This document shows, piece after piece, positions 1 to 55,928 of a DNA stretch of 64,000 nucleotides (position 1 is its first letter; every line of letters starts with the position of its first letter). Both the position numbers and the translations under genes were made by a program. The notes below the pieces were generated by a model, which saw only the letters and a program-made list of their open reading frames with translations, was not told where the DNA came from and searched no databases. The stretch lies in IMG/VR virus record IMGVR_UViG_3300027996_002186, positions 419,263 through 483,262 of that record. The stretch is one strand, 5' to 3'.

Positions 1-852
1 GAATGTGAAATTATCACCATCAATTTTAGTAATTGATTTACTACCAACTTGAACATCATCCCACTTATCCTCATCTGTTTTTTCTTCATCTGAAAGTTTA
101 TTCCATTCCTCTTCTTTGAAATCCTTTCTTTTATAAATAACAACATCATCTTCTTTATACTCAACTGGTTTTCCAGTTTTTTCAAATTTAACCCAGTCTT
201 CTCTTTGTTTCTCTCCAAGTGTTTTAGCTTCTATTTGTTTAGCTGCGGCTAGTTTCTTAGATTCTGGATCCTCTGATTTTTCTAAAGATGATATTTCAGC
301 ATTCAATAAATCCAATGTGAATTGATCCTTTTTAATATTAATTATTATTTGTAATTGTGGGTTCTTAGAACCACCACCCTGTTTTACTAATACAGCATCC
401 ATCTCTTTAATAGCCATACCTTTCATTTGTACAATTATCTTTTTTAAGATATCTTGCTTTTGTTTTAATATCTTAGGATCTACAGCTGGTTTCTTTTCGG
501 CCTCTCCTGGTTTTTTATCAGTAGTTTCCTCTGCTCCTTCTTCTGCTACTGCTCCTTCTTCTCCTTCTTCTGCTACTGCTTCTTCTGCTTCGAATACTTT
601 AGACTCTTTGACAGAAACTTTACCTAATTCTAAGTTTAAACCAGTTTGTTTAACAATAGCATCATTTATCAACTTCAGATATTTTTTATAAATAACCTCA
701 ATCTCATTACCACCCTGCGTCTTTCTTATATTTTCTCCAGCTTTTTTAAACATTTTTCCGAAGAATTTACCAATAGCACCAAGAAATTCTTCATTGACTG
801 GTTTATTATTATTATTATTCTTGAAAGATTCAAAGGTTCTTACATATTTCAT
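1..852 (-). CDS. Hypothetical virion-internal protein, runs off the left edge of the window (not in ORF track)
   Basis: Manual translation from CAT at 850-852: MKYVRTFESFKNNNNKPVNEEFLGAIGKFFG..., open to position 1; TAATATATA motif at 878-886(-). Confidence 0.75.
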   Translation of the reverse strand, partial: MKYVRTFESFKNNNNNKPVNEEFLGAIGKFFGKMFKKAGENIRKTQGGNEIEVIYKKYLKLINDAIVKQTGLNLELGKVSVKESKVFEAEEAVAEEGEEGAVAEEGAEETTDKKPGEAEKKPAVDPKILKQKQDILKKIIVQMKGMAIKEMDAVLVKQGGGSKNPQLQIIINIKKDQFTLDLLNAEISSLEKSEDPESKKLAAAKQIEAKTLGEKQREDWVKFEKTGKPVEYKEDDVVIYKRKDFKEEEWNKLSDEEKTDEDKWDDVQVGSKSITKIDGDNFTF

Positions 853-3803: not shown

Positions 3804-3818
3804 AAAATAATAATTAGT

Positions 3819-4184: not shown

Positions 4185-4198
4185 AAATAACCTTTGTA

Positions 4199-4492: not shown

Positions 4493-4522
4493 TAGATATA
4501 AATAAAAAATAATAATATTTAA

Positions 4523-5701: not shown

Positions 5702-5744
5702 TATATCATATACTGGTAAATTATGTTAGTAACAATAAGTAGAT

Positions 5745-6780: not shown

Positions 6781-6782
6781 AT

Positions 6783-6977: not shown

Positions 6978-6978
6978 A

Positions 6979-8663: not shown

Positions 8664-8736
8664 AACTTATTAATTTTATTTAATCGATGAACAGGTTTGA
8701 GTTATATCGGAAATCTATCCCAAACCATCTCGAACA

Positions 8737-15923: not shown

Positions 15924-16186
15924 TATAATGGTTTATAATTTGGGATAGCTCCTTTGTAATTCTTATTACCACTCTTTAGTTGTTCTCTTTCTGCTTCAGA
16001 TGCAGCTCCATATTCTGGATCTTTCTTTTCTTTATCTTTACAATCCATACAGATTATATCTTCATTGAACATACTCATTGTGGTCATATTATTAGTTGAT
16101 TCACCACATCTATCACAATTATCTCTTCTCATGTCGAAGGAACCATGTCGTGCTGAATAATCTTCAAATGTTTTTAAGTTTTTCAT
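15923..16186 (-). CDS. Zn-finger protein with N-terminal capsid-targeting-like motif
   Basis: MKNLKTFE; CDRC...MSMFNEDIICMDC. Confidence 0.7.
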   Translation of the reverse strand: MKNLKTFEDYSARHGSFDMRRDNCDRCGESTNNMTTMSMFNEDIICMDCKDKEKKDPEYGAASEAEREQLKSGNKNYKGAIPNYKPL

Positions 16187-16542
16187 TCACCTAATTTAGT
16201 TTTTAATTCTTCTATGAATGGTTGAAAATTATGTTTACCATAATCATCTTTAAGTACTGTTGCAACAGCATCTGCGAAATCTTTATATGACATACTATCA
16301 TCAATTTGATTGATTGATTTACTTATATCACTTGATAATAAATCTGATTCATTTGATTCATTGAATCTTTTAAATTTTTTAATTTCATTCACATCATCAC
16401 TGACTGTTAATTTTTTAACAACCTTTAAGAGAAAATCTACATCTTCTATAGCAGCACTTGGATTATCATAGTAATAATCATCACCCCTTTCTTGTAAATG
16501 GGTAAATATATATTCTCTTTCCCAATCAGTTAGTTTATCCAT
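16183..16542 (-). CDS. Hypothetical protein with an internal copy of the targeting motif
   Basis: Internal IKKFKRFNESNES. Confidence 0.6.
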   Translation of the reverse strand: MDKLTDWEREYIFTHLQERGDDYYYDNPSAAIEDVDFLLKVVKKLTVSDDVNEIKKFKRFNESNESDLLSSDISKSINQIDDSMSYKDFADAVATVLKDDYGKHNFQPFIEELKTKLGE

Positions 16543-28222: not shown

Positions 28223-28236
28223 AATATATATAGACT

Positions 28237-36803: not shown

Positions 36804-38483
36804 ATGAAGTGGATAAAGGACCGAAATAAATTCTTAAAAGAAGCTAAACTTCGAGACGTTTTGTACCCTAGTCAATCAAAGGAAGTCGCTAGTTCTTGGA
36901 GTGAGAGATATCTTGATTATGAAGAAGTAGCTGCAACTGATAAAATAAAACAAGGTAAGTGGAAATTAGAAGAAGAAGATAAGTTAAAAGTACTTGGAGA
37001 GTTCTTCGATTGTAATATGAGTAATATATTTGAGTTATTTGAAAATTTACCAGATAAATTTAATGAGATTATTTCACAATCAATTGATTTTGATTTAATC
37101 AATAATCGAGATAAAGAAAAGTATAGTGTTATATTTAAGGAATTTGATATTAAAAAGCCTACGATAGACCAAATTGTTTTACTATTTGACAATGTTTTCA
37201 GAAAACTTTCTGTAAATGAAACAAACTCTTCTGAGATGATTCAGAAGGATGAGAATGGTAGACCAATGAGAGATGATAGTGGTAATATGATTAAAATACA
37301 GAAAGAACCGGGATCTCCTATATTCTCAACTAACTTAGTTAATATTAATTCATTTATATCTGATTATAATAGATGTTTTAGAAGTGATGAAGTACAAACA
37401 GATACATTTAATCAAAATGATATTCAAAATTTGAAAAGTTATGCTTCAGATCATTGTAATGATTACCAGGCTGATTTTGAGATATTTAATAGAGATATGT
37501 ACCTTTCTATATCACATAACCCAAAAGACATATTAAATATGTCAATATCTAAGTTTTATTCATCTTGTCAACATTTATACAATGGTGGATATAGAAGCCA
37601 GTTATTAGCTAATGTATTTGATCCTAATAGTATGCCAGCTTATTTAATATTTGATACTCCTTTATTTTGGAATGATAAAAAGATATCTGAATTTTTACCA
37701 TTGACAAGAATGATAATTAGAAATATCGAAACTTATGATGAGAGTGATGGTAAAGAGCCTCAAATATATTTTGATAGAGCTTATCCAGATAGGATGAAAG
37801 ATATCTTTGATGAAATTATAACAAAATATAGTGAGAATAAAAAAAGTGAGAATAATCCTAGGGACTATTACTATACACCAGATATTGATATCGAGACTGA
37901 TAAAGATATAAAAGAACCTTATATGGATAGAATTCGATTAAAACAGAGGCCTTATATAGGTATTAACACCAAAACACTTCACTTAAACAGAAATTATGAT
38001 TGGAGTAAAGTTAAAATAGCTCCAAATGCTAAGATTAAAGAATTGATAATTGAGACTGATGATATTCCAGAAAATATGTTAGATATTGATATTAAATTGG
38101 AGTGGGTAAAGTTCAAATATTTGAAAATTAATACATTGAAAAATTTCTCACATATTAAAACAAATGCTATTGCCTTTGATAAATGTAAATTTGATAACAA
38201 GGTATTAGAAGATATAAGTAAGATAAACAAAAATATAGATAAATTACAAATTGTTAGTTGTGATGCTAATAATTTGAATATTTCTGTTTTCGAAAATCTC
38301 GAAGAGTTACATATGATTTATACATTAGACTCATTAGAAGAATTAAAATCAACATTATCAAATTTAAAAAACATTAAAAAACTTGTTATATCAGGTGATT
38401 TATTAAGTGATAAAGAATCTAAAGCATTTGTTAATTCATTGAAATCTAGAATGAGAGTTGAAATAGTAGGACCAGTAATATGA
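36804..38483 (+). CDS. Protein with targeting-like N-terminus, SC(M/Q)-type domain and LRR-like C-terminus
   Basis: MKWIKDRNKFLKEA; SSCQ...RMII...FDRAYP...PYMD; IKELII/LEELHM/IKKLVI repeats. Confidence 0.65.
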   Translation: MKWIKDRNKFLKEAKLRDVLYPSQSKEVASSWSERYLDYEEVAATDKIKQGKWKLEEEDKLKVLGEFFDCNMSNIFELFENLPDKFNEIISQSIDFDLINNRDKEKYSVIFKEFDIKKPTIDQIVLLFDNVFRKLSVNETNSSEMIQKDENGRPMRDDSGNMIKIQKEPGSPIFSTNLVNINSFISDYNRCFRSDEVQTDTFNQNDIQNLKSYASDHCNDYQADFEIFNRDMYLSISHNPKDILNMSISKFYSSCQHLYNGGYRSQLLANVFDPNSMPAYLIFDTPLFWNDKKISEFLPLTRMIIRNIETYDESDGKEPQIYFDRAYPDRMKDIFDEIITKYSENKKSENNPRDYYYTPDIDIETDKDIKEPYMDRIRLKQRPYIGINTKTLHLNRNYDWSKVKIAPNAKIKELIIETDDIPENMLDIDIKLEWVKFKYLKINTLKNFSHIKTNAIAFDKCKFDNKVLEDISKINKNIDKLQIVSCDANNLNISVFENLEELHMIYTLDSLEELKSTLSNLKNIKKLVISGDLLSDKESKAFVNSLKSRMRVEIVGPVI

Positions 38484-40147
38484 GATATTTAAAACACATA
38501 AAAATATTTGAAGCTTTTAAATCTGATAAGTTATCTAAAACACTTGGATATATCGATTCGAAAAGAGACAAAGATGTCTTTTTAGATAAAATAAAAAGAA
38601 TATGTAATATAATTGATTTCCCTTATTCTGAATTATCAGATGAGTATTTTGAATATTTACCATTCAACTCAGCGCTCAAAAAGGCTGATACGATAAAAGA
38701 TGAACCTTGTGTAGCTACAAGTTCTGAAGAGTTCCCAGAATATGCTATTGCTGGAGAAGTTTGTAAGGAAGGTAAAATTAGAAGAAGATGGGGTAGTCGA
38801 ATTAGAGCTGTCTCTTGTCCTGTGTGTAATGGTACTGGTGTTAAGCCTAAACGAGGCGAGCCTAAGTTAGTTAAATTTTGGTTTAATAAAGATGGTAAAT
38901 ATATAGAAACTACTTGTGTGGATGGTATCATTAGAAATTATGGTGGTAGTTCTTCGGGGTCTGATATTCCATTACCACAAACATCATCTTCATATACGGT
39001 ATCTGGTGAAAAAATTTATCGATCAGGAGGAGCCCGAACTTTACAAACCGGACAATATATACATATAAAGATAAATGGTGAAGAGATGTATGCTTATATT
39101 CTTTCAGAAAGAAGAGATGTATATGCTATACAACCAAAGATGAATGGTGGTATTCCTAATAATACAAGTTCTAGGGTATGGAAAAAAATATCAAGTTATT
39201 CTTGGGATATTGGTGATGGTGATTTTGAATGGTTAATACCAGTTAGTCTTAATAATATGGATAATGATGATGCAGAACCAGAAGCTGATCCATATACTTG
39301 GAACACAGGACTCACTTTTAATTATAGGGGTATAAATTCGAATGGTAGGAATATTGAGCGTTTTATTAAAGATTCTCACTTTGCTATTGTTATGGATTTT
39401 GGGAAATTGAAAAAGTCTGAATTTCAAACTAGAACACACACCAAACATGGAAGAGAGGATAATAAAGTTGGAGCTTTATCTTTTATGAGTGATGATGAAA
39501 TTAAAAAAGAAAATATAGAAAGATATATTAAAAAATTAGCTTCTAGATTAGAAGTTGATGGTAAAGATGTAACTAACCTACCAAAGGTTATAAAAAGATT
39601 ATTAGGATATAGAAATTTAGTATATTTTTTAAGACAAGGACATACAGATCGTTATATATCTACAATTCTAAAAGGTTATATACTTTTATTAAAGAGTCCT
39701 GATGATCGTAAAGAAAGATATTTGAAAGAATTGAATGATAATATTAAATATTCTTTTAAGCAAAGCGTCGATAATAATAAGGATTTAACTAACATTCTAA
39801 AAGAGGTTAAGGATAGGTTAAAAAGAGAGGATAAGGAAGAATATATTGAAGTATTAGATCTTTTAAGTGAATTAAGTTTAGTCATTTATGATAAAATAAA
39901 TAGTTTTGAGCTTGAAACAATTGAAGATTTAGAAATTTTATATCAAAAGATAATGAGTATGAAGAATATTGTTAGATCTGATAGATATTCACTATCTAAA
40001 TTATCATATCATATGGATTACTCATTCAGACGTAGTTCTGATTATTCATATAGATACTTAACTGATAGATATTATATAGAACCTTCGAAGATGCCTAACT
40101 TAATAGAAGATATAAAAACAGCAATGCGAATAATTAAAAAAATGTAA
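38480..40147 (+). CDS. Protein with targeting-like N-terminus and DnaJ-type Zn-finger motif
   Basis: MRYLKHIKIFEA; CKEG...CPVCNGTG. Confidence 0.65.
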   Translation: MRYLKHIKIFEAFKSDKLSKTLGYIDSKRDKDVFLDKIKRICNIIDFPYSELSDEYFEYLPFNSALKKADTIKDEPCVATSSEEFPEYAIAGEVCKEGKIRRRWGSRIRAVSCPVCNGTGVKPKRGEPKLVKFWFNKDGKYIETTCVDGIIRNYGGSSSGSDIPLPQTSSSYTVSGEKIYRSGGARTLQTGQYIHIKINGEEMYAYILSERRDVYAIQPKMNGGIPNNTSSRVWKKISSYSWDIGDGDFEWLIPVSLNNMDNDDAEPEADPYTWNTGLTFNYRGINSNGRNIERFIKDSHFAIVMDFGKLKKSEFQTRTHTKHGREDNKVGALSFMSDDEIKKENIERYIKKLASRLEVDGKDVTNLPKVIKRLLGYRNLVYFLRQGHTDRYISTILKGYILLLKSPDDRKERYLKELNDNIKYSFKQSVDNNKDLTNILKEVKDRLKREDKEEYIEVLDLLSELSLVIYDKINSFELETIEDLEILYQKIMSMKNIVRSDRYSLSKLSYHMDYSFRRSSDYSYRYLTDRYYIEPSKMPNLIEDIKTAMRIIKKM

Positions 40148-40151
40148 AATT

Positions 40152-41120
40152 ATGGAAAGATACAACACAAACACAAAAGTAGCTAATTTTGGTGACTACT
40201 GTAATAACTTTGAAAAAGAAAAAGAAGAGTTGAAGAAAGTTAGAAGGTCTATTAAACCTAATACACCAGATACACAGAAGTATCCTAAGAACTCTAAATT
40301 AAAATTCAACAACATCACTAGAAAGATGGATGATTTGACACCAGACATCATTGATGATACATTAAAATCGATGGAAGAGGAAACAAACGAGGAATTTAAT
40401 TTAGGTATTAAAAGTGCTTGGAATAAATTAATGGGCAGAGATACTGATGAATATAAAATAACAAAATCTTTGATTGATATGATAAAATCCAACACCGAAA
40501 AATTCATACGCCGAAACGATTTGGATTCTATAAAGTATCAAAAAGCAACACAAGAAAACCCAGAGGGTATATTATCTGTTGAATTAAATACTGACAAAAC
40601 CTCACACCCACACACAGGAATTGAAAATAGTCCAGAATATAAACTTAAAAACTTTATTCAATTGGTAGTTAAGAATTTGGTTTCTATGGATGATGGTAAT
40701 GATGGTTTTGTGATTGAGATAATTAGCGAAGGGGAAAGATTGGATGTTGAAATAAGTAGTTCAAATATTGAAAAAATATGGAATGAATTAATGAAATCCA
40801 AAAATGAATTATTATCGACTCAAAAAATGAATATTGATAGTTCTCACCCATATTCTAAATTTAAAAGTAAATTGGGTATCAGAGAATCTAAAATAAAATC
40901 ATTTAATGAGTCATCTACTGACTTAGAGGTTTTGAATAAACTAAAACAACTACCAGCTTATGGTAAGTTAAAAGAAGATTTTAGAAAATCTATTCATGAG
41001 TTTACTAACGAAGTAGATTCATCTGCGGCTGATACTGGTTATGATGAAGGTGATAGTGACCACGATATGGCTTTTCACGAGGCTATACAAGAAGCAATCA
41101 ATGAATTAGTAGGTTGGTAA
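40152..41120 (+). CDS. Multi-segment hypothetical protein with an internal targeting motif
   Basis: TNEE and IRESKIKSFNES at apparent segment boundaries. Confidence 0.6.
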   Translation: MERYNTNTKVANFGDYCNNFEKEKEELKKVRRSIKPNTPDTQKYPKNSKLKFNNITRKMDDLTPDIIDDTLKSMEEETNEEFNLGIKSAWNKLMGRDTDEYKITKSLIDMIKSNTEKFIRRNDLDSIKYQKATQENPEGILSVELNTDKTSHPHTGIENSPEYKLKNFIQLVVKNLVSMDDGNDGFVIEIISEGERLDVEISSSNIEKIWNELMKSKNELLSTQKMNIDSSHPYSKFKSKLGIRESKIKSFNESSTDLEVLNKLKQLPAYGKLKEDFRKSIHEFTNEVDSSAADTGYDEGDSDHDMAFHEAIQEAINELVGW

Positions 41121-41129
41121 AATAATATT

Positions 41130-41330
41130 ATGAAAAATAAGATAGTTTATACATTAGTTCTAGGAATATTAGTTCTATTGGGATTCATCGTAGTAGGTGA
41201 TTTTTTTGTTGCATTAAACGAAAATAGACCGGTTGATGATTCTGTAATTAATTTATTACAAGTAACAATAACAGGACTTATTGGTATAATTGGTACTTAT
41301 TTTGGTATGAAACACAAGAATGAAGAATAA
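41130..41330 (+). CDS. Small two-TM membrane protein (holin-like)
   Basis: Two hydrophobic helices, GTYFG, charged tail. Confidence 0.6.
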   Translation: MKNKIVYTLVLGILVLLGFIVVGDFFVALNENRPVDDSVINLLQVTITGLIGIIGTYFGMKHKNEE

Positions 41331-41338
41331 AATTGTGG

Positions 41339-42802
41339 TTATTGACTTACCATCTTTATCACTTCTCCATTTGAATAATGATAAAGTAATAATCCCTCAG
41401 AATATTCATTAACTTCTTGTCCCATAAAATTTAATACTTTAATCAATTTCCTTTCTTTAATTTCATTATTTATTGTTATTATATCAAATGTTTTTGATAA
41501 ACCATTAAAATCAAACTGTGTTAATTTATAATAATTAACTCCTCTCTTTATACTCACATCAATATATTTATAACTTTTCGTCATTATTGAATTACCAGCA
41601 CCACTAAGAGTGTGTATAGTTTCCCAGTTATATCCATCAATTGATCTTTCTATATTATAATAATCATTATTTATTTCTGTGGCAGTTACCCATTTTAATA
41701 ACCCCTGTCGGCCGCTAGTACCGATTATCAATTCACCATTAAAAAAAACTAAGTCAATTGGTAATGGGGCTAAGTTACAACCACCTGATATATTATTAAG
41801 TATGTATTGATAATCACACTGGTCTCCAGCAAATCCATCAACAACTAAGAAGATACATTCACCAGCTGCTACATTGAAATTGCTAGAGGACCAACTAGAT
41901 CCTGGATTTGATGGACTCGGAGCAGATTCAATAAATGTTAGATTATTTGCAGTTCCGCTAAATATTGTCATCTGTAATCCATAGTTAGGAGACGGGTTAA
42001 CACAGTTTGTTATTCCACTAAAGTCTATGTTATAAACCCCTGCCAATGTTGTGCAGAAACTAAACCAAGAACTATTGTTAACCACATAAGGAACATCATC
42101 TCCCGGTGTGCATGTTGGACAAGTTGTTCCAATATTACCATCTAAATTTTCACCACCTGATATTAAATCTTCTGGTGTGTATCCGGTATTAGTACCGTTG
42201 TATGTTTGGCCACAAGAATCTATACCAGCTGATCCACTAGAAATATTATTAACCAAGGGACTAAAAACACCAATACAAAATTCTGTGTGTCTATCATTTG
42301 GTCCTCCACAATACAAATCAACGACTTGTACTAAGTATGTTGCTCCGATAGTAAGACTGGTGAGCATCGTGTTTTGTCCGGGATCCCCGTTATGTAAATA
42401 ATTATAAATTTCAGTACCACACACAGGTAAACACCCTAAGTTAGCATCATATATTCTAATATGTGGACTAACACAATTAGTGTAATTAATCTTATTAAAA
42501 GCGAATACTAGAGAATCGTTATTTGCTGTGAAACTATACCAAACAGAATGTTCAGTTGATCCTCCACCATAATTAGTATAACATTCACCAACTTGTAAAG
42601 TTGCGTCAAATGTTGTTCCTGTACAATTTAAACCAGCATCAATAACTAGTATTGATGCTGATGAACAATCATCATTCATAGGAGCAGCTTTAAGTTGTAT
42701 ATTAACAACTTTTTTATCAGGCATAAACCATTCTGTTGAATCATATTGAGAATATCCAATTGTTGATATCAACAGTATTAGTACTAATACTATTTTATTC
42801 AT
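41339..42802 (-). CDS. Secreted Cys-rich protein with T9SS type-A-like C-terminal region
   Basis: Signal peptide ending GYS|Q; NDDC..A and VWYSF.A domains; PLPIDL..F...W.TATEINND...IERS.DG; C-terminal LNFMGQEV...YSNG...K. Confidence 0.8.
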   Translation of the reverse strand: MNKIVLVLILLISTIGYSQYDSTEWFMPDKKVVNIQLKAAPMNDDCSSASILVIDAGLNCTGTTFDATLQVGECYTNYGGGSTEHSVWYSFTANNDSLVFAFNKINYTNCVSPHIRIYDANLGCLPVCGTEIYNYLHNGDPGQNTMLTSLTIGATYLVQVVDLYCGGPNDRHTEFCIGVFSPLVNNISSGSAGIDSCGQTYNGTNTGYTPEDLISGGENLDGNIGTTCPTCTPGDDVPYVVNNSSWFSFCTTLAGVYNIDFSGITNCVNPSPNYGLQMTIFSGTANNLTFIESAPSPSNPGSSWSSSNFNVAAGECIFLVVDGFAGDQCDYQYILNNISGGCNLAPLPIDLVFFNGELIIGTSGRQGLLKWVTATEINNDYYNIERSIDGYNWETIHTLSGAGNSIMTKSYKYIDVSIKRGVNYYKLTQFDFNGLSKTFDIITINNEIKERKLIKVLNFMGQEVNEYSEGLLLYHYSNGEVIKMVSQ

Positions 42803-42884
42803 TTTTTATTATGTTTAATTTGTAGTTATGTACCTTATATATTAAAAATATACAATTGTTATATGAGGTTTTAATATATAAGTT

Positions 42885-43436
42885 ATGAAATTTTTAAAAA
42901 AATATAAATTTTTTGAATTAAAAACAAGTACATATTTATCAGCTGCTGATAAGCTAGAAGGATTACATCCAACAAGAGCTAAGAATATTAGGAAATATGT
43001 AGATGATCAACAAAGAGTTGATGTTGATTATCTTGACCCAAGACCATTTCATATAAATAATGATATCTATTATATCACCGGTATTACCAAAGATGAATAT
43101 GGGGTTGGATCATTACCAGAAGGTGAGTTAGTATTTAGAATCGATGTTGAGTTTAAATCATCAACCACAAGTGACGAAAGAATTGAGATGATTATATTTA
43201 ACAATGAGAAATTTATCAAGGATGATATAGAATTAGATGGATCACCAATCAATAGGGTAAACCTTAAATTTAAAAGACTAATAGGTACTGAACATGAACA
43301 AGAACAAGAAAGAACATTATCCAGAAGATTCTTTTTTGAAACTAGAAAAGAAGCAAGAGCCTTTCTTTCTATTATAGAAAGTGAATTGGGTATTAAAATG
43401 CTTATTAAAATAAATCAAATATATAAAACTAACTAA
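42885..43436 (+). CDS. Hypothetical protein with N-terminal capsid-targeting-like motif
   Basis: MKFLKKYKFFE; TAATATATA at 42872-42880. Confidence 0.7.
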   Translation: MKFLKKYKFFELKTSTYLSAADKLEGLHPTRAKNIRKYVDDQQRVDVDYLDPRPFHINNDIYYITGITKDEYGVGSLPEGELVFRIDVEFKSSTTSDERIEMIIFNNEKFIKDDIELDGSPINRVNLKFKRLIGTEHEQEQERTLSRRFFFETRKEARAFLSIIESELGIKMLIKINQIYKTN

Positions 43437-43443
43437 GTTTACG

Positions 43444-43668
43444 TTATTGATTCTTCAATTTAACAATTTCTCTTTTAATAGAAAAAATTTCAGAATATTT
43501 TTCTTTTTTGAAATCCACCATTAATGAATCGGTGTCAAGTTTACCTTTGTGATAATCTCTATTACGATCATACAAAGCAAAATGATATTCAGGAATACTT
43601 TTTCTAATCTTATTAATCTTCTTTGTTAGAAGACATATCTTGTATGCTTTTACAATCTCATTTTTCAT
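43444..43668 (-). CDS. Basic hypothetical protein
   Basis: ORF track. Confidence 0.5.
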   Translation of the reverse strand: MKNEIVKAYKICLLTKKINKIRKSIPEYHFALYDRNRDYHKGKLDTDSLMVDFKKEKYSEIFSIKREIVKLKNQ

Positions 43669-43730
43669 ATTGAGTATATATAATATTTTAATCTAAGGTT
43701 TTAAGTATGTTTATCAAAATTCAAAACAAT

Positions 43731-43776
43731 TATACAAATATAAGTATAAATATACAAATATACAAATATACAAATA
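43731..43776 (+). repeat. TATACAAA octamer x4 (three in tandem) upstream of a tagged-ORF operon
   Basis: Copies at 43731, 43751, 43759, 43767. Confidence 0.7.
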
Positions 43777-44055
43777 ATGGAATCGGATTATATAATAGAT
43801 TTTAAAAGACTTAATGAATTAACTTCACATGAAAATGACAACCCATCATCAAATCAGGGAGGGTTTGGTGCGATGTACATCCACACAACTACTAGAAAAC
43901 TTATCAAAGAATATATGGAAATATACCAAGGTAGGTATAGCAGAAGTAGTGATGGGAAGAAAGTAGATGAGGTTATAGAAACTCTACACTTTAATCGAAT
44001 ACTTATATCAAAATCTGATATAAGAGATGGTAAAATAAAAGAAATATTAGAATGA
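43777..44055 (+). CDS. Hypothetical protein with C-terminal tag
   Basis: Ends IRDGKIKEILE. Confidence 0.7.
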   Translation: MESDYIIDFKRLNELTSHENDNPSSNQGGFGAMYIHTTTRKLIKEYMEIYQGRYSRSSDGKKVDEVIETLHFNRILISKSDIRDGKIKEILE

Positions 44056-44262
44056 ACAAAGACAAAGAAATTTAATTTATGGTAATGAGGAATTATAAAA
44101 AAATGTTATCAAACTTAGTAGCAAATATTGTTGCTTATGATAATTGGTCAGATGAATTTTCACGAAAGGAAATAAACAAACTTTATAAATTATTAATTGC
44201 AATCCGAACAGGAACTCCTGTTAAGAGAATCTAAATTAGAAGGTGTTTTAGATGAGAATTAA
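44052..44262 (+). pseudogene. Disrupted tagged ORF (in-frame TAA plus frameshift)
   Basis: MNKDKEI*FMVMRNY...KLL in one frame; LQSEQELLLRESKLEGVLDEN* in the +1 frame; overlaps both neighbours like an operon gene. Confidence 0.6.
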
Positions 44263-44473
44263 ACTAAAAGATATGCATGATAATATAACTTATAACGAAC
44301 AACACCAAGTAATTTATAAAGGTATTAATTTAGGAATAACAAGAGAAAATATAACAGACTATCAATTTCAAACCGGATTCGACCCAGTTGAAATGGTAGA
44401 AAATTTATACAAACAATCTTTACCAGTGGTTAGAGATAAAAAACTAAATCAAATATTAGATGAAGAAAATTAA
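44252..44473 (+). CDS. Hypothetical protein with C-terminal tag
   Basis: Ends VRDKKLNQILDEEN. Confidence 0.7.
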   Translation: MRIKLKDMHDNITYNEQHQVIYKGINLGITRENITDYQFQTGFDPVEMVENLYKQSLPVVRDKKLNQILDEEN

Positions 44474-44804
44474 AATGTACGATTTCTTATCGTCAAAAGA
44501 AGGTATTTATATCTCATACTTAATCAAAGAGGTTGATAAAAATGAATCAATTTGGAAATCAACCTATGAAAGCAGAGATAAAAAGCTAACCTTATTATTA
44601 AACGAAGACTTACTCATAGTTAGTGAGAACGTGGCGGAACATTACAAATCAATAAAAAATAAGATTAATGATTTAGATTTTGTTAGTTCGGATATTATAA
44701 AAAATATGGATGCGCTGGTTGAAGAACTTGATAAGACAGTACAATATACAGAATACGTAACAGACAAAATAAAGGAATGTGAATGTCAGGATATAAAGGA
44801 ATAA
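44460..44804 (+). CDS. Hypothetical protein with internal tag
   Basis: Internal SRDKKLTLLL. Confidence 0.65.
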   Translation: MKKIKMYDFLSSKEGIYISYLIKEVDKNESIWKSTYESRDKKLTLLLNEDLLIVSENVAEHYKSIKNKINDLDFVSSDIIKNMDALVEELDKTVQYTEYVTDKIKECECQDIKE

Positions 44805-45061
44805 TTAAATATGTAGAAGAACATTTCGATAATAGATTTACTTTTATTTCGACCACATTCTTACACTCACACTCACCAAGTTATAGGAATAATGAATTTT
44901 TCACAAAAATGGAAATGATTATACTCGATAACTTTGATGGGGAAACACATAATATAAAAATTATGTATAAAACAAACAAGATTTTAATAAATAAACTTAA
45001 TAAAATAATCCGTGATAAAAGGGGCGATGTTATAGATAATATTATTAAAGTGTATGAGTGA
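44783..45061 (+). CDS. Hypothetical protein with variant tag
   Basis: Ends KRGDVIDNIIKVYE. Confidence 0.6.
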   Translation: MSGYKGIIKYVEEHFDNRFTFISTTFLHSHSPSYRNNEFFTKMEMIILDNFDGETHNIKIMYKTNKILINKLNKIIRDKRGDVIDNIIKVYE

Positions 45062-45272
45062 TGGTATTAGATTACACAAAATAGGAGCCGAGAAGACTAG
45101 AGTATTTGAGGTTAACTTTGATGAAGTTTATGACCATTATAAACAAAAAGCAGAAGATGCTGGTTATTTTGGAGATCTTAAATTCATTAAAGAGAGGGGC
45201 AAAATAATAGTTTATTCTGTGATAGAGTTACCACCTGATGATGATGAATTAATCATCCGAGTTTCCTCTTAA
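45054..45272 (+). CDS. Hypothetical protein
   Basis: Coupled ORF. Confidence 0.55.
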   Translation: MSDGIRLHKIGAEKTRVFEVNFDEVYDHYKQKAEDAGYFGDLKFIKERGKIIVYSVIELPPDDDELIIRVSS

Positions 45273-45731
45273 ACGCTTAGTCATTTCCTCATAAGAGATT
45301 GGTATTCTCCAATAAAGTGATACATGAGAACATTCTTTATTTGAGTACCTTTCTAAATCATCTATTTTTATGAATTGACTATCATCATCTTTACGTTTAC
45401 CACCACCCACATGAACTTTAATAGCAAATATTGGTTGTATTATATATGAATATGTCTTTAAGAATTCATTTGATCTGTATATAACATCGAAAACATCACC
45501 AAATCTAAATGTTGGTACGGAAAAATCTTGTACGTGATCCTCATTAAAAATACCGTGTATTTCAACTCTTAAGCTATCACCAATAACTTCACCCCTTCTT
45601 TCAGAAGTTACAGTAGCCTCTAGATTTTGATCACGAGCATCGCATAATATATCATTAAGGTCATCAATTATAATTGACTCTTCCTCTTTGGTTATATCCT
45701 CAAATATTTTATATTTAATCAGGTACTTCAT
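45249..45731 (-). CDS. Paralogous-domain family protein
   Basis: MKYLIKYKIFED; DLNDILCDARDQNL...VIYRSNEFLK. Confidence 0.7.
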   Translation of the reverse strand: MKYLIKYKIFEDITKEEESIIIDDLNDILCDARDQNLEATVTSERRGEVIGDSLRVEIHGIFNEDHVQDFSVPTFRFGDVFDVIYRSNEFLKTYSYIIQPIFAIKVHVGGGKRKDDDSQFIKIDDLERYSNKECSHVSLYWRIPISYEEMTKRLRGNSDD

Positions 45732-46797
45732 TTATAAATTTCATACTTATTTCTTTTACGACTGGTCTAACATCAGTCTCTAAATCTGATTCCGATATAG
45801 ATATTTCAAAATCATCAAACTGCATTTCAGATTTAAATTTATATTCACCATCTTTCTTACCAACATATGAAAATTCTTCTTTCCACTCATTCATACCATT
45901 ATCAAGTACTTGAAATTCTATTGGGATTGATCCATTTGGATCAAAAGATGGGTTTCTTGCTTCTTCTCTCGATTTGTGTGAAGTGTTATTGTTTATTCCG
46001 TTAGGAAAATGTTTATCTAAAAAATCTAATAAACCCTTTATATTGAAATCATCTAAGCTTTTTAATTTCTCTGGATGAGGTGGGTAACTAAATGTCCCTC
46101 TTTTGTTATGTTGGCTAAACCTAATTGTAATGTTTTCAACATCATATTTAATTATATCCTTTATTTGGTTGATTCTATAATCGACATCATCTAATAGAAT
46201 AGTATTTTGTCCTCTTTTATAAAGAAGTACACCTATACCATATTTTGTAAATCCATTGGATGGCATACTTCTTTCCCTACTTGGGGTGACCATATAACCA
46301 TATCCCAAATCTTCCATATCATACAACATACTCTCAACATCACCACCGACATCATTATTATCTATATTTGTAATAGACTCATTTAGACTACAATCAGTTA
46401 CGTTTATATCAATATACCAAACTTCTGTCCCAATATAATCCAAAATATCTGAACTACTTAATTGGTACCATTCATTACCACTTAGATGTATCTCATATGT
46501 GCAAAAATTACAACCCTTTGACTTAACATATTGTGAAACTCTATATAAAGAATCAGATAGTTCTTTTGTTATTTCAAATTTCCCAGACATACTACCATCC
46601 TTGGTTGGTGTTATCTGAAAAAATATTCTATCAACCCCACGATTCGATCGTGTAATTTTCTTATTTATGAAAAGACCTAAATCCTCCACTTCTAATAAAA
46701 TATCTTTGATATCATCAAATAAATCCAAGAGGATTGCTTGAGGAAATTGAGGATATTTTGATTTCTCAAATAATTTATATGTTTCTAAATATTTCAT
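45715..46797 (-). CDS. Paralogous-domain family protein, two domain copies
   Basis: MKYLETYKLFE; DIKDILLEVEDLGL; SLNES linker; DVESMLYDMEDLGY. Confidence 0.7.
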   Translation of the reverse strand: MKYLETYKLFEKSKYPQFPQAILLDLFDDIKDILLEVEDLGLFINKKITRSNRGVDRIFFQITPTKDGSMSGKFEITKELSDSLYRVSQYVKSKGCNFCTYEIHLSGNEWYQLSSSDILDYIGTEVWYIDINVTDCSLNESITNIDNNDVGGDVESMLYDMEDLGYGYMVTPSRERSMPSNGFTKYGIGVLLYKRGQNTILLDDVDYRINQIKDIIKYDVENITIRFSQHNKRGTFSYPPHPEKLKSLDDFNIKGLLDFLDKHFPNGINNNTSHKSREEARNPSFDPNGSIPIEFQVLDNGMNEWKEEFSYVGKKDGEYKFKSEMQFDDFEISISESDLETDVRPVVKEISMKFINEVPD

Positions 46798-47774
46798 ATC
46801 TTAAATCTTAATCTAATATTGAAGCTGTGATAATGGCAATTCATTAACTCATCTATTGATTTCATATCTGCCCATTTATTTTGAAAGGATGCCGTTGCGA
46901 CCGAGATGAATAACTCATAACCAAGAGTTGTCATATAAGCATCTAGTCTTCTAACTACTTCACCGAACCATTCTGGTAAATCAAGTGATCCACTTCTATC
47001 AACCTCATCCCTCATATTAATTGTATCTATATTAATATAGAATGGTATGAAATAACCCTCTTTAATCTCATAATCAACATCATTATCAATAAACTCAATA
47101 CAAATATCATCAAGATCTCTTCTTAACTCAGATTTCTCGGTGTTCCGGAAGTTTTGATTTAAGTGGGTGTCCGAAAACAAATGTTGCTTCCGTTCGGTAA
47201 ATCTTACCAGACCAAACTGAGGTGATTCTACTTTACTCTCTGTGTAATATCCCGATGAAATTCTAATCGGAGGCCTTGTTTTTTTTGTTTTTATATCTAT
47301 TTGTGATATCTTAAAATAACCACTATCGAATTCAGAAATATTCTCTAGTTTTTCTAGATTTATATCTAAATCACACACACCCATTTCTGTATAATCAACG
47401 TTAAAAGCGGAGTTTTGATAAAATGCTCCAAACCTTAAATCACTATCTAAATATTCATCAAGTCTCATAATAATATCTATCAATTCTTCTGTTATTTTTA
47501 TATCACCAGAGTCACTCCCAGCACCAGAAGAAATATCATACTTATCATATATCTCAATCATCATATCATTATAAATACCTGATTTAGAATGCATTGAAGT
47601 TTGTTGATTGTAATCAACAAACAAATGACCTGTTAAAGATTCACCATCCATTGTTGATGATATTATACGATATTGTAGCCCTAAATCAATAAGATCCAAA
47701 CAGATATCATTGATATTATCCATTTCATCTGCACTTATCCCAACACTTTCATTAAAACTTTTTAAGTATTTCAT
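46794..47774 (-). CDS. Paralogous-domain family protein, two domain copies
   Basis: MKYLKSFNES; NINDICLDLIDLGL; YTES linker; DLDDICIEFIDND...RRLDAYMTTLG. Confidence 0.7.
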   Translation of the reverse strand: MKYLKSFNESVGISADEMDNINDICLDLIDLGLQYRIISSTMDGESLTGHLFVDYNQQTSMHSKSGIYNDMMIEIYDKYDISSGAGSDSGDIKITEELIDIIMRLDEYLDSDLRFGAFYQNSAFNVDYTEMGVCDLDINLEKLENISEFDSGYFKISQIDIKTKKTRPPIRISSGYYTESKVESPQFGLVRFTERKQHLFSDTHLNQNFRNTEKSELRRDLDDICIEFIDNDVDYEIKEGYFIPFYINIDTINMRDEVDRSGSLDLPEWFGEVVRRLDAYMTTLGYELFISVATASFQNKWADMKSIDELMNCHYHSFNIRLRFKI

Positions 47775-48570: not shown

Positions 48571-50601
48571 ATGAAAATGTATAAATACCCAGAATTTAAA
48601 TACCCAAACTTAGAAACATATATATCAGAACTTGAGAGTATATTAAATAAGTCAGAATTAGTAATAAATGAATTGTTAAAAATTGATAATAAAACATATG
48701 ATACTTTCCTAAAGCCATATTTCATGGCTTATGAAGATATAAACAATCATTACTTTTATCTATCACACATAAATTCAGTTAAGAATACTGATGATACACA
48801 ACGTGTTGAAACTGAGAGCTTACCAATTATGAGTGATTGGTACACAAAGATAGGTCAACGAGATGACATTCATCAAGCATTATTGGAGGTTTCGAAAACA
48901 AATCTTAACCCAAGTCAGCGCATAGTAATCGAACAATCATTGCTTAGTAACAAACTAAAGGGTATTGGTCAAGAAGATTCAATTAAGAAAAGGCTTGGTG
49001 AAATTAGCAAAGAGTTATCTGAGTTATCTGATTCATTTTCTACAAACCTACTAAAAGCTACAAAGGATTTCAAACTAGAAGTAAAAAATCCAGAAGATGT
49101 TAGTGAGTTCCCTGATGATGAATTACAAAGACATGTAAAAGAGGATACTGATCATTGGGAATTTACCTTACAAGCACCATCATACTCAGCTTACTTAAAG
49201 TATGGATCTAACACAGATATAAGAGAGAAATTATCCAAAGCATTATCAACAAGAGCTACTGAAAATGAAGAACTTATTGAAAAAATATTAACTCTTAAAA
49301 ACGAAAAGGCTAAAATATTAGGATATAAAAATTACGCTGAGATATCGATATTAACAAAAATGGCTGATAGTCCAAATGAAATAGTTGGGTTTTTGGATAG
49401 GTTAGCAACAATCGCCTTACCTATTAAGTCAAAAGAAGATGATGAATTATTATCATTCACTGAAAGAAAGTATGGCGTAACACATTTAAACTCTTGGGAT
49501 AAAGGTTATTACACAAATAAATATAAGGAAAGTGTTTATGATTTTAAGTCAGAAGATTTGAAACCATATTTTGAACAATCAATGGTGTTAAATGGTTTAT
49601 TTGACTTTCTGTATGAAAAATTCAAGCTTAAATTTACTAAAGTAGATACTTATGTTTGGGATGAAAAGGTTACTGTGTATGATATAACACGTAATGGTGA
49701 AGAACATTCAAGAGTTTATATCGATCTAGAATCTAGAGATGATAAAAGATCCGGTGCTTGGATGAATAATTCAGAAGTTGGTTATGTAAAGGAAAATGGT
49801 GAAAAGGTTTTACCAATTGCTTATATAACTTGCAATTTCACACCATCAACTGATAAGTTACCATCATTACTTTCACACTATGAAGTAGAAACACTATTTC
49901 ATGAGATGGGACATGTATTACAACACGTCTGTTCAGAAGTGGAAGATTTCACATACGCTGGTATAGGTGGTATCGAGTGGGATGCTGTTGAGTGGAGTTC
50001 TCAATTTTTAGAACTATTTGTTTATGAAGGAGATGTATTAAGGAAATTTGGTAAACACCATGAAACTGGTGAAATAATACCGGATGAGTTCATTAAAAAG
50101 ATTAACGATTTAAGAACATACAGAGCAGCTAATGGAATCATAGGACAAGTGAAGAATGGTAAATTCGATATGACAATTTTCCAATCAGATGATACGTCAA
50201 AGGAATATGTACAATCAACACTTGATAAGATAATAGAAGATTTTGGATTGGAATCTTTTGATGGTAATAAATGGCAATGTGGGTTTAGTCATATTTTTGC
50301 TGGTGGATACTCAGCAGGGTATTACTCTTATAAATGGTCAGAAGTTCTTTCAGTTGATACTTTCTTAAAATTTAGAGAAAATGATGATAGTGATAAGTAT
50401 TATGAAGAATTTTTGAGTAAGGGCTCATCTCTGCCAAGTATGGATATGTTTGTTAATTATATGGGTAGAAAGCCTAGTGAAGAATCATTAGTAAACTACC
50501 TAATCGGATTACAACCTGTTTCGTCAGGTCGAGAGTTTGAATCCCTTCAAGCGAAGTTTGATTCAAAAAGAATTAATAATGAACTTAGAGGGTTGGGGTA
50601 A
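48571..50601 (+). CDS. prlC: M3A metallopeptidase, oligopeptidase A (OpdA/PrlC)-like
   Basis: KRSGAWM, TLFHEMGH, WDAVE.SSQFLE, FSHIFAGGYSAGYYSYKWSEV. Confidence 0.93.
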   Translation: MKMYKYPEFKYPNLETYISELESILNKSELVINELLKIDNKTYDTFLKPYFMAYEDINNHYFYLSHINSVKNTDDTQRVETESLPIMSDWYTKIGQRDDIHQALLEVSKTNLNPSQRIVIEQSLLSNKLKGIGQEDSIKKRLGEISKELSELSDSFSTNLLKATKDFKLEVKNPEDVSEFPDDELQRHVKEDTDHWEFTLQAPSYSAYLKYGSNTDIREKLSKALSTRATENEELIEKILTLKNEKAKILGYKNYAEISILTKMADSPNEIVGFLDRLATIALPIKSKEDDELLSFTERKYGVTHLNSWDKGYYTNKYKESVYDFKSEDLKPYFEQSMVLNGLFDFLYEKFKLKFTKVDTYVWDEKVTVYDITRNGEEHSRVYIDLESRDDKRSGAWMNNSEVGYVKENGEKVLPIAYITCNFTPSTDKLPSLLSHYEVETLFHEMGHVLQHVCSEVEDFTYAGIGGIEWDAVEWSSQFLELFVYEGDVLRKFGKHHETGEIIPDEFIKKINDLRTYRAANGIIGQVKNGKFDMTIFQSDDTSKEYVQSTLDKIIEDFGLESFDGNKWQCGFSHIFAGGYSAGYYSYKWSEVLSVDTFLKFRENDDSDKYYEEFLSKGSSLPSMDMFVNYMGRKPSEESLVNYLIGLQPVSSGREFESLQAKFDSKRINNELRGLG

Positions 50602-50643
50602 TAATCTTTTAAGCGTTTTGTAAAAAATAAATAAATAATAGAT

Positions 50644-51396
50644 ATGATAACAGATAAATACGTATTTTTTTGGGGTGGAATCTGCAGCCAATGGGCCGCA
50701 TCTGAATTTGAAATTGATGGACAAAAATATACTTGTGCAGAACAGTATATGATGTATAAGAAAGCTTCTTTATTTGAAGATGAAGATGTAGAAAATGCTA
50801 TAATGAGAACCAATAACCCCAGAGAGCAAAAAGCTTTAGGAAGAAAAGTTAGAGGTTTTGACAAAGATAAGTGGGAAGAAGTTTGTAAAGAATATGTTTA
50901 TGAAGCTAACTATGCTAAGTTCACACAAAACTCATTCATGCTTGAAGAGTTAAAAACTTATGGTGATAGAGAAATTGTAGAAGCATCACCAGAAGACTCT
51001 ATTTGGGGGATTGGAATGCATGAGACTGACCCTGATATCCTTGACAAGACCAAGTGGAGGGGAACAAACTGGCTTGGAGAAGCAATAATGCGAGTTAGAG
51101 ATGAATTATTAACTGAAAATGTAAAGACTTTAAATTTAATATACAGACATACAGGCGATGGTAAGTTCGTTGCTGAAATGGAAGACGGTTCTTTTAAGGA
51201 CTTGGGCCCTAATGCTGTCGGGATGATTAGGTATACTTATTTTGAAGAAGATACACTACCATCAAATGGATGGGAAGTTACAAGAGGTAAGCTATTAGAA
51301 GATTACCAACCAAAGATGTTAAAAGATTATCAGGATGGTAAGTTTGAAGTTTCTCACATAGATGAACATGGGATGAAACACTTTAAAGAAAAATGA
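50644..51396 (+). CDS. NADAR (YbiA-like) protein with C-terminal extension
   Basis: SQW, AEQYMM..KA..F.D, KALGRKV, KFTQN, VEASP.D.IWGIG, W.G.N.LG...M.VR. Confidence 0.9.
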   Translation: MITDKYVFFWGGICSQWAASEFEIDGQKYTCAEQYMMYKKASLFEDEDVENAIMRTNNPREQKALGRKVRGFDKDKWEEVCKEYVYEANYAKFTQNSFMLEELKTYGDREIVEASPEDSIWGIGMHETDPDILDKTKWRGTNWLGEAIMRVRDELLTENVKTLNLIYRHTGDGKFVAEMEDGSFKDLGPNAVGMIRYTYFEEDTLPSNGWEVTRGKLLEDYQPKMLKDYQDGKFEVSHIDEHGMKHFKEK

Positions 51397-55918: not shown

Positions 55919-55928
55919 TACATATATA

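What the first reader, a model, noticed from the sequence alone, without database searches (positions are those of the whole stretch)
40152..47774. Internal (N/T/F)E-S sites at domain boundaries suggest polyproteins cut inside the head
Seen: tandem domains of 45715- and 46794- are separated by SLNES and YTES. ORF 40152 has TNEE and IRESKIKSFNES between segments; ORF 16183- has a full internal IKKFKRFNESNES; ORF 852- has VNEE and KESKVFEA. These match the end of the N-terminal motif. Known: T4 gp21 and phiKZ gp175 cleave head proteins after Glu. Inference: gene fusions that are packaged once and split into separate effectors by the prohead protease.
Basis: partly seen in the sequence, partly recalled or inferred. 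Interest (0 to 1): 0.6.

Follow-up and report, generated by a model that had tools for sequence, protein, structure and literature searches.

The report
Leftover tag ends at phage gene-fusion joints

Summary
The loose motif [NTF]E[SE] is not enriched: 177 internal copies against 163±12 in shuffles. Full-length internal tags are not enriched either.

Three sites do stand out.
- SLNES in ORF 45715-46797 lies in the predicted disordered linker between two homologous domains. Its E-S is the only invariant in that linker across four lineages at 34-45% identity. A natural variant carries domain 2 directly behind an N-terminal tag.
- KSFNES in ORF 40152-41120 keeps a hydrophobic-x-E-S pattern in distant homologs.
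- IKKFKRFNESNES in ORF 16183-16542 is the best internal tag match in the proteome.

YTES in ORF 46794-47774 sits in a 44-residue disordered linker but has no counterpart in homologs.

The window belongs to a phage of at least 483 kb. Outside the window it encodes a T4 gp21-family prohead protease. About 11% of its ORFs start MK[YH][LI]K.F(N)E-S, and a second tag class has the core of the T4 capsid targeting sequence. Similar sites flank the protease domain (VLNES) and the capsid protein propeptide (HSINEN).

Gene fusion is well supported. Packaging and cleavage are plausible but untested. This is a new variant of a known kind.

The parts
46794..47774 (-). P0003, 326 aa: tag MKYLKSFNES, domain 1 (residues 1-165), disordered joint (166-209), domain 2 (210-326).
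   Evidence: The family HMM hits residues 1-156 and 209-296. Stand-alone homologs of domain 1 are P0025 (171 aa), P0027, P0028 and P0034; of domain 2, P0031 (168 aa). AF2 gives pLDDT below 50 for residues 166-209.
47148..47279 (-). P0003 joint, holding YTES (47235-47246), KVES (47223-47234) and NTEKS (47130-47144).
   Evidence: It is a disordered linker. YTES has no counterpart in the fused homologs P0029, P0033 and P0035. Only S215 and E216 are invariant there.
45715..46797 (-). P0002, 360 aa: tag MKYLETYKLFEKS, domain 1 (to residue 136), linker (137-148), domain 2 with a C-terminal beta module (149-360).
   Evidence: The family HMM hits residues 1-126 and 143-233. AF2 and the PDB fold search split the model at residues 137-148.
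46354..46389 (-). P0002 linker SLNESITNIDNN, with the candidate cut after Glu140 (SLNE|S at 46375-46389).
   Evidence: pLDDT is below 50. The site reads NES in nine fused homologs and IKES in P0016. E-S are the only identical columns in the linker across four lineages, against 20.7% identical columns overall. P0013 carries domain 2 directly behind a tag, in the same gene order.
45249..45731 (-). P0006, 160 aa: a single-unit member of the same family (tag MKYLIKYKIFED) and third gene of the overlapping array.
   Evidence: A homolog sits next to the P0002 homolog in LR745206.1 and in L039.
40152..41120 (+). P0001, 322 aa: a conserved N-terminal 75 aa, then TNEE (40383-40394), a variable middle, IRES-KIKSFNES (40878-40913) and a conserved C-terminal 68 aa.
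   Evidence: FNES aligns with VNES, VKES and VSES in P0020-22 and with KSEL in P0023. The C-terminal piece resembles a 97-aa tagged protein, tag included, at E 0.006.
16183..16542 (-). P0004, 119 aa, with a full internal tag IKKFKRFNESNES at 16345-16383 and no N-terminal tag.
   Evidence: It scores 15.9 bits, the best internal hit of the FNE-type tag scan. In the DNA, ATT stands where ATG would be, and an in-frame GTG lies 3 codons upstream. No homologs were found.
1..852 (-). N-terminal 284 aa of a 354-aa tagged protein (MKYVRTFES) with VNEE (787-798) and KESKVFEA (586-609).
   Evidence: PVNEE is kept in the adjacent paralog. KESKVFEA is not.
38480..40147 (+). A 555-aa tagged protein (MRYLKHIKIFEA) directly upstream of P0001.

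Best explanation
The window comes from a phage of at least 483 kb with a T4-type head module: gp23-like capsid protein, portal, and a gp21-family prohead protease fused to a repeat scaffold.

About 68 of its 622 ORFs carry a 9-13-residue N-terminal tag, MK[YH][LI]K.F(N)E-S. They are mostly small (median 150 aa) and acidic. Another 13 ORFs carry a tag with the core of the T4 capsid targeting sequence (Y..F[ILV].E). I read these tags as capsid-targeting propeptides that the prohead protease removes after the Glu.

P0003 and P0002 are in-frame head-to-tail fusions of two tagged units. They arose in a tandem array of overlapping genes (P0003, P0002, P0006). At the joint the targeting half of the second tag has decayed. 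The processing half (hydrophobic-N/x-E, then S) survives in a disordered linker. This is clear in P0002 (SLNE|S), in a third family member (SINES), and in the unrelated P0001 (SFNE|S) and P0004 (RFNE|SNE|S).

The most likely working: the N-terminal tag takes the two-unit precursor into the prohead core, and the protease cuts both after the tag and at the joint, releasing two separate proteins.

Shown: the tag, the fusions, the linker position, E-S conservation, and the presence and family of the protease.
Inferred: packaging, cleavage, and any role after ejection.

YTES, TNEE, KES and VFEA carry no weight of their own.
For: Genome and protease:
- The record holding the window matches the 483,262-bp contig G001 at 99.999%.
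- G001 holds TerL, portal, a head maturation protease (phrog_207, E 1.6e-30; weak PF03420), the capsid protein and the sheath.
- The protease domain is 30-37% identical to the annotated gp21-type 'prohead core scaffolding protein and protease' of XacN1, PTm5 and cyanophages.

Tag:
- 55 strict tags plus look-alikes were counted.
- Synonymous codons vary freely inside the tag, so the constraint is on the peptide.
- A DNA pattern for part of the tag set (hydrophobic-x-Glu at positions 7-9) occurs 20 times in G001 and 35 times in LR745206.1, and 0 times in reversed controls.
- The second tag class has Y, F, [ILV] and E with the same Y-x-x-F-[ILV]-x-E spacing as T4 MKTYQEFIAE (one residue later in most of them). 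In T4 those residues (4 and 7) target and (8 and 10) direct processing.

Matching sites in head proteins:
- VLNES follows the protease domain directly.
- KLFES follows the scaffold repeats.
- HSINEN ends the conserved N-terminal piece of the capsid protein.
- T4 gp21 cuts after L/I-x-E. SPN3US gp245 prefers Ser at P1'.

Fusions.
Linkers.
E-S conservation.

A promoter-like TAATATATA box is shared with the structural genes and is 2.2-fold enriched upstream of tagged genes.
Against: - There is no protein-level evidence of any kind, because the phage is uncultured.
- Short and full-length internal motifs are not enriched across the proteome.
- The tag has subtypes (FNE, FE-S, YK.FE-S) that do not share one P3-P1 register.
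- P0001 and P0004 lack an N-terminal tag, so how they would be targeted is unclear.
- E-S conservation rests on only 4-5 lineages (p about 0.04 per site) and could reflect a structural role such as a helix cap.
- Tagged proteins are acidic, whereas the T4 internal proteins are basic.
- Docking the joint into the protease gave no answer.
Confidence: 0.42

Rival explanations
1. Fossil joints. The ORFs are real fusions of tagged units, but the leftover NES or ES is only a remnant, or a structural element such as a helix cap. The proteins work, packaged or not, as uncut two-domain proteins.
For: - Fusion is shown.
- The targeting half of the internal tag has decayed.
- In P0003 the homologous spot is KSEL, not a clean site.
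- In SPN3US, 13 of 14 mapped cuts remove N-terminal propeptides and none splits a protein into two kept parts.
Against: - E-S is the only invariant in an otherwise free-varying linker at 34-45% identity.
- Substitutions keep a hydrophobic residue at P3 (L, V, V, I).
- The same pattern recurs at a third family joint and in the unrelated P0001 family.
- Domain 2 exists naturally as a stand-alone tagged protein.
Confidence: 0.33
2. The N-terminal tag is not a capsid-targeting or cleavage signal. It serves something else, such as another sorting route, a chaperone or degradation tag, or expression. Internal copies then say nothing about head processing.
For: - No proteomics exists.
- The tagged proteins are acidic and have no detectable family.
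- The class-1 tag does not share the T4 register exactly.
- Tenacibaculum phage PTm5, which has a related protease, had no match to a DNA pattern for part of the tag set.
Against: - The constraint is on the peptide, not the DNA.
- The second tag class has the T4 CTS core residues with the same spacing.
- The same hydrophobic-N-E motif bounds the protease domain and the capsid propeptide.
- The tag sits on unrelated proteins.
Confidence: 0.15
3. Chance. All the internal sites are random tripeptides in an N/E/S/K-rich proteome and were picked after the fact.
For: - The loose motif gives 177 copies against 163±12, and full-tag PSSM hits are at or below shuffle level.
- Each named ORF expects 0.2-0.7 copies.
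Against: - The P0004 tag at 15.9 bits is the top internal hit.
- K.[FY]NES occurs 3 times against 0.3 expected.
- The sites coincide with disordered domain joints.
- The sites are conserved in homologs, and modules swap exactly at this point (P0013, P0015).
Confidence: 0.1

Closest known systems
T4 internal proteins IPI, IPII, IPIII with the capsid targeting sequence (MKTYQEFIAE), processed by gp21
   Same: - A short N-terminal tag sits on otherwise unrelated small proteins.
- The tag ends in hydrophobic-x-Glu.
- The phage has a gp21-family protease and a gp23-like capsid protein.
- The second tag class here (Y..F[ILV].E) has the four T4 residues shown to matter, with the same spacing.
   Different: - There are about 70-80 tagged ORFs, against three or four in T4.
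- The main tag is a different variant (MK[YH][LI]K.FNE-S).
- The cargo is acidic, not basic.
- Some cargo is a two-unit fusion with a second candidate site at the joint.
- Nothing has been shown at the protein level.
phiKZ gp175 and SPN3US gp245 processing of giant-phage head and ejection proteins
   Same: - A huge phage with many candidate head proteins.
- Cleavage after Glu, with Ser favoured at P1'.
- The protease carries a C-terminal extension that is removed.
   Different: - Their motif is small-residue-x-E (A/S/G at P3), whereas here P3 is hydrophobic and P2 is often Asn.
- Their propeptides are mostly long (111-254 aa).
- 13 of 14 mapped SPN3US cuts remove N-terminal propeptides rather than split a protein into two kept products.
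- By sequence the protease here is nearest to annotated gp21-type proteases.
T4 core proteins gp22, gp67 and Alt, which are cut at several sites or at both ends
   Same: One precursor is cut by the prohead protease at more than one L/I-x-E site, and some fragments stay in the head.
   Different: Those cuts dismantle the scaffold or trim termini. They do not separate two autonomous folded domains that also exist as independent genes.
Viral polyproteins cut by a virus-encoded protease
   Same: Several autonomous units lie in one ORF, with candidate protease sites in the flexible joints.
   Different: - Here there are only two units.
- They arose recently by fusion inside a paralog array.
- The fusion is optional, since split and single-unit variants exist in nature.
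- Cleavage would take place inside the prohead.

Membership tests
T4-type CTS-tagged internal head proteins | The phage encodes a gp21-family (Peptidase S77-like) prohead protease. | tested here: met
   It is absent from the window and from the 312-kb record. It is present in the 99.999%-identical 483-kb contig: phrog_207 at E 1.6e-30, weak PF03420 at E 1e-4, GEFDHP and VSSRAAG motifs, and 30-37% identity to annotated gp21-type proteases.
T4-type CTS-tagged internal head proteins | An N-terminal tag of about 10 residues, with targeting residues at positions 4 and 7 and processing residues at 8 and 10 (hydrophobic-x-Glu). | tested here: inconclusive
   The second tag class (13 ORFs, none in the window) has Y, F, [ILV] and E with the T4 spacing, one residue later in most of them. 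The class-1 tag on the window proteins has L/I4, F7 and E8 or E9, in a shifted register with three subtypes.
T4-type CTS-tagged internal head proteins | The same tag sits on otherwise unrelated proteins. | tested here: met
   There are 68 tagged ORFs, and the one recognisable paralog family covers only 28 proteins. Tagged proteins range from 52 to 948 aa.
T4-type CTS-tagged internal head proteins | The proteins are present in virions with the tag removed after Glu. | not testable with these tools
   The phage is uncultured and no proteome is available.
Protease-processed polyprotein | One ORF holds two or more units that are autonomous elsewhere. | tested here: met
   For P0002: P0013 is a tag plus domain 2 alone, in conserved gene order. 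For P0003: P0025/27/28/34 match domain 1 and P0031 matches domain 2. A double HMM hit supports both.
Protease-processed polyprotein | Accessible sites at the unit boundaries that match the protease's specificity. | tested here: inconclusive
   The sites lie in linkers with pLDDT below 50. They resemble VLNES after the protease domain and HSINEN in the capsid propeptide. The specificity of this protease is not known, and docking gave no answer.
Protease-processed polyprotein | Separate mature products are observed. | not testable with these tools
   This needs mass spectrometry or an in vitro cleavage assay.
phiKZ/SPN3US-type head processing | A cleavage motif with a small residue (A/S/G) at P3: A/S/G-x-E. 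| tested here: not met
   P3 is L, V, I or F at the candidate sites (SLNES, VNES, IKES, FNES).

The most novel reading that the evidence does not exclude
A huge Bacteroidetes-type phage marks roughly one gene in eight with a capsid-targeting propeptide and so loads its head with dozens of different small acidic proteins. Some are made as two-unit precursors, which the prohead protease splits at a retained tag end inside the capsid. That would be a natural polyprotein cargo system, evolving by fusion, deletion and module swapping exactly at the tag.
Probability: 0.3. Interest if true: 0.7.

Novelty: new variant of a known kind. Interest (0 to 1): 0.5.

Why it matters
If the tags work like the T4 capsid targeting sequence, the sequence alone predicts the packaged, and probably ejected, protein set of an uncultured phage of at least 483 kb. 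That would be about 70-80 proteins, far more than in T4.

It would also give a simple rule, the tag plus hydrophobic-x-Glu-Ser, for finding such cargo in related huge phages. LR745206.1 has 35 matches to a DNA pattern for part of the tag set.

Fused units with a kept cut site would show how such cargo sets evolve, and would be a natural precedent for the engineered CTS-fusion packaging used in T4.

The claim can be tested directly by mass spectrometry, because the predicted new N-termini are exact.

Tried and rejected
- Pfam and PHROGs on ten window proteins gave no meaningful family.
- PF03420 and the T4 portal Pfam in the 312-kb record gave nothing, because that record lacks the structural module. 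The bS21 neighbourhood there holds SbcC and helicase-type genes, not head genes.
- A sequence search of the PDB with the protease domain gave no hit.
- Fold searches with the P0002 model: BFVD gave nothing usable (TM about 0.1). The wide PDB search gave only generic alpha/beta (PilO- or ferredoxin-like) matches at Z 7 or less, so no function was assigned.
- Complex prediction with protease residues 1-164 and the P0002 joint (118-165) returned 'no answer', which is evidence neither way.
- The word-based homolog search for P0003 found only itself; the full representative search was needed.
- P0004 homologs were sought in IMG/VR and in LR745206.1, and none was found.
- A DNA pattern for part of the tag set had no match in Tenacibaculum phage PTm5, so no cultured proxy with a virion proteome was found.
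- The idea that the tag is a DNA-level recombination or expression element was rejected, because synonymous codons vary freely.
- An apparent internal tag at window 13732-14145 turned out to be a mis-called start; the true ATG is at 13777.
- No other genetic code was needed. No reads tools were used.
Full report
WHAT THE WINDOW IS

The window is G000:C1:8837-72836 (minus strand) of a 312,709-bp IMG/VR virus record with 29% G+C. That record matches IMGVR_UViG_3300027996_002186 (G001, 483,262 bp, CheckV 98%) at 99.999% over 303,850 bp. The phage genome is therefore at least 483 kb, and window position w equals G001 position w + 419,262.

The nearest record in the phage collection is the 634,780-bp uncultured phage LR745206.1. 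The genome encodes ribosomal protein bS21, as do the Bacteroidetes-infecting lake phages described in PMC9723584.

The structural module lies outside the window, in the part of G001 that the 312-kb record lacks:
- TerL
- portal (phrog_213)
- a 713-aa head maturation protease (phrog_207, E 1.6e-30)
- a gp23-like major capsid protein
- the tail sheath

The protease has GEFDHP and VSSRAAG motifs and a weak PF03420 match. It is 30-37% identical to the annotated 'prohead core scaffolding protein and protease' or gp21 of Xanthomonas phage XacN1, Tenacibaculum phage PTm5, cyanophages and Flavobacterium phage immuto.

THE N-TERMINAL TAG

Of 622 ORFs in G001, 55 begin MK[YH][ILV]. With look-alikes (MRYL, MNHI, MEYL and others) about 68 carry the tag.

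Among the 55 strict tags the subtypes are:
- ..K.FNE: 16
- ..K.FE-S: 15
- ..Y K.FE-S: 11
- F.E: 2
- other spacings: 11

For the 44 that fit a defined register, the residue after the Glu is Ser in 15, Asn in 5, Glu in 5 and Lys in 4.

Codons inside the tag vary freely. Leu uses six codons, Ser uses TCT, TCA and AGT, and Asn, Glu and Tyr each use both of their codons. The constraint is therefore on the peptide, not on the DNA.

A DNA pattern for part of the tag set (hydrophobic-x-Glu at positions 7-9) occurs 20 times in G001 and 35 times in LR745206.1. It occurs 0 times in reversed-pattern controls and 0 times in phage PTm5.

Tagged proteins are small (median 150 aa, interquartile range 128-191) and acidic (median pI 4.8). 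Only six are 280 aa or longer.

A second tag class sits on 13 ORFs: M[IL]KKY..F[ILV].E-S, MKSYTEFLLE and MKNNMKKYTEFVNEE. It has the Y-x-x-F-[ILV]-x-E core of the T4 capsid targeting sequence MKTYQEFIAE (PMC8442874). In T4, residues 4 and 7 direct targeting, residues 8 and 10 direct processing, and gp21 cuts after L/I-x-E (PMC9026906).

The same kind of site bounds known protease substrates in this phage:
- VLNES directly follows the protease domain.
- KLFES follows about twelve YIAENLDKNIAYSE repeats in the scaffold part.
- HSINEN ends the conserved N-terminal segment of the capsid protein. It is invariant even in a small paralog of the capsid protein's N-terminus.

SPN3US gp245 prefers Ser at P1' (PMC10052503).

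A TAATATATA-like box lies within 50 nt upstream of 31 of 68 tagged genes, against 116 of 554 others. It also lies upstream of the portal, protease, capsid, sheath and TerL genes. Its timing class is unknown.

THE OBSERVATION

As a short motif it is not special:
- [NTF]E[SE] occurs 177 times internally against 163±12 in shuffles.
- NES occurs 30 times against 33.
- Each named ORF expects 0.2-0.7 copies.
- PSSM scans for a whole internal tag are not enriched across the proteome.

What does exceed chance:
- K.[FY]NES occurs 3 times against 0.3 expected.
- The P0004 internal tag scores 15.9 bits and is the top true internal hit in the FNE-type tag scan.

P0002 (45715-46797)

An HMM of the ~130-aa tagged paralog family hits residues 1-126 and again 143-233, starting at model position 14. 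SLNES (137-141) therefore sits where the end of the second unit's tag would be.

AF2 (11 sequences, mean pLDDT 68) gives two domains. Residues 137-148, SLNESITNIDNN, fall below pLDDT 50. Structure matches also split the model at that point.

Ten homologs were found:
- Nine fused homologs read ..NES.. at the joint, and P0016 reads IKES.
- The linker varies in length and sequence: CSL, YRGPNYYKSRYGV, YRGPDWYKMRYGT.
- Across four lineages at 34-45% identity, E and S are the only identical columns in the linker. Overall, 20.7% of columns are identical.
- P3 stays hydrophobic (L, V, V, I) except for Thr in P0014.

P0013 (200 aa) is MKYLNTYKLFE followed directly by domain 2. It sits in the same gene order, between the upstream gene and the P0006 homolog.

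P0015 replaces domain 2, at exactly this point, with a different tagged unit that still has its complete MKHLNKISEE tag in frame.

A third family member, G001 341606-342721, has ..KVSESINES.. 14 residues before its second DI..DI.DEL helix.

P0003 (46794-47774)

The HMM hits residues 1-156 and 209-296. The full representative search found stand-alone N-units (P0025 of 171 aa, which ends at the equivalent of residue 169; P0027; P0028; P0034). It also found a stand-alone C-unit (P0031, 168 aa) and other fusions (P0029, P0033, P0035).

AF2 gives a 44-residue linker (166-209) below pLDDT 50, and YTES (177-180) lies inside it. So YTES is accessible and lies between the units. It has no counterpart in the homologs, however. 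The spot homologous to the tag end is NTEKSEL (211-217), where only S-E is invariant. It reads LSES in P0033 and P0035, and LSEL in P0029 and P0031.

P0001, P0004 and P0005

P0001 (40152-41120):
- FNES aligns with VNES, VKES and VSES in homologs at 40% identity, and with KSEL in P0023.
- TNEE aligns with TNES, SNEE, EES and SES.
- The C-terminal 82 residues, motif included, weakly resemble a 97-aa tagged protein (E 0.006).
- P0001 has no canonical N-terminal tag.

P0004 (16183-16542):
- In the DNA, the tag's first codon is ATT where ATG is expected. An in-frame GTG lies three codons upstream.
- The 52 codons upstream are open, and the ORF overlaps the end of the previous gene. A fusion, possibly with an internal start, is therefore likely.
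- No homologs were found.

P0005 (ends at window 852):
- PVNEE is kept in the adjacent, otherwise very divergent paralog.
- KESKVFEA is not kept.

INTERPRETATION

Firm conclusions:
- The tag is real and is constrained at the peptide level.
- P0002 and P0003 are fusions of tagged units in an array of overlapping genes. P0003 and P0002 overlap by 4 nt, and P0002 and P0006 by 17 nt.
- Module gain, loss and swapping happen exactly at the tag position.
- The surviving E-S lies in a disordered joint.
- The phage has a gp21-family protease.

Inference:
- The tag directs proteins into the prohead.
- The protease cuts after the Glu, both at the N-terminal tag and at the joint.

I put the whole chain at about 0.4. 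The main rival, at about 0.33, is that the joints are uncut fossils.

No family or diagnostic fold was found. Docking of the joint into the protease gave no answer and counts neither way.

COMPARISON AND NOVELTY

The system works like T4 CTS/gp21 cargo loading. The second tag class meets the T4 residue pattern. The class-1 tag on the window proteins is a variant.

The sites do not fit the phiKZ/SPN3US A/S/G-x-E rule. In SPN3US, mapped cuts remove propeptides and do not split a protein into two kept parts.

No paper in the library links a capsid targeting sequence with huge phages.

The finding is a new variant of a known kind: plausible, testable by exact predicted termini, but unproven.

No step needed referral.

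Noticed in passing
G001 27949-29415, 38632-40113, 48648-50660, 232818-233810 and nine more (outside the window): A second class of N-terminal tag (M[IL]KKY..F[ILV].E-S, MKSYTEFLLE, MKNNMKKYTEFVNEE) sits on 13 ORFs of 124-670 aa. It has the Y..F[ILV].E core of the T4 capsid targeting sequence MKTYQEFIAE.
   Followed up: partly
G001 135766-137907 (L017:15766-17907): The prohead protease is fused to about twelve tandem 14-residue repeats (NIAYSEYIAENLDK), each holding T4-type [IL]-A-E sites, then an acidic tail. VLNES, KLFES, TKNES and KTNES sit at segment borders. ES occurs 14 times against 3.7 at the proteome rate.
   Followed up: partly
upstream of gene starts across G001; in the window, for example before the tagged genes: A TAATATATA-like box lies within 50 nt of the start of 46% of tagged genes against 21% of other genes. 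It also lies upstream of the portal, protease, capsid, sheath and TerL genes. It is a candidate phage promoter of unknown timing.
   Followed up: partly
G000 293136-293294, 156403-156510, 122290-122481 and 257468-257959: Three short ORFs match separate parts of the Pfam Gp23 capsid profile (E 6e-9 to 3e-5). A 163-aa ORF copies the capsid protein's N-terminal piece, including the invariant HSINEN. These are capsid-gene fragments or paralogs scattered far from the real capsid gene.
   Followed up: no
G000 254011-254163 (-), L003: The phage encodes ribosomal protein bS21 (PF01165, E 1.9e-12). Here it lies next to SbcC-like, DnaJ-like and helicase/PhoH-like genes, not next to the head genes as described for the bS21 phage clades in PMC9723584.
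   Followed up: partly
G000 1-8836, against the end of G001: The first 8.8 kb of the 312-kb record holds four tandem members of the tagged family and has no counterpart in the otherwise identical 483-kb contig. This is either a strain-level cassette difference or the other genome end.
   Followed up: no
window 13777-14145 (+) and 55433-55972 (-): These are tag variants that longest-ORF calling mis-starts. MPNTNKYIKSFILFES has a 4-residue extension, with the ATG at 13777. ..VVDYLKSYKLYKVQES probably starts at a GTG.
   Followed up: partly
window 36804-41120 (+): This is an operon-like run of a 559-aa ORF, a 555-aa tagged ORF (MRYLKHIKIFEA) and P0001. None of them has a Pfam or PHROG family.
   Followed up: no
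G001 341606-342721 (G000 149378-150493): This 371-aa member of the same domain family starts directly at the first helix, with no N-terminal tag. It has ..KVSESINES.. at the joint before an apparent second unit.
   Followed up: partly
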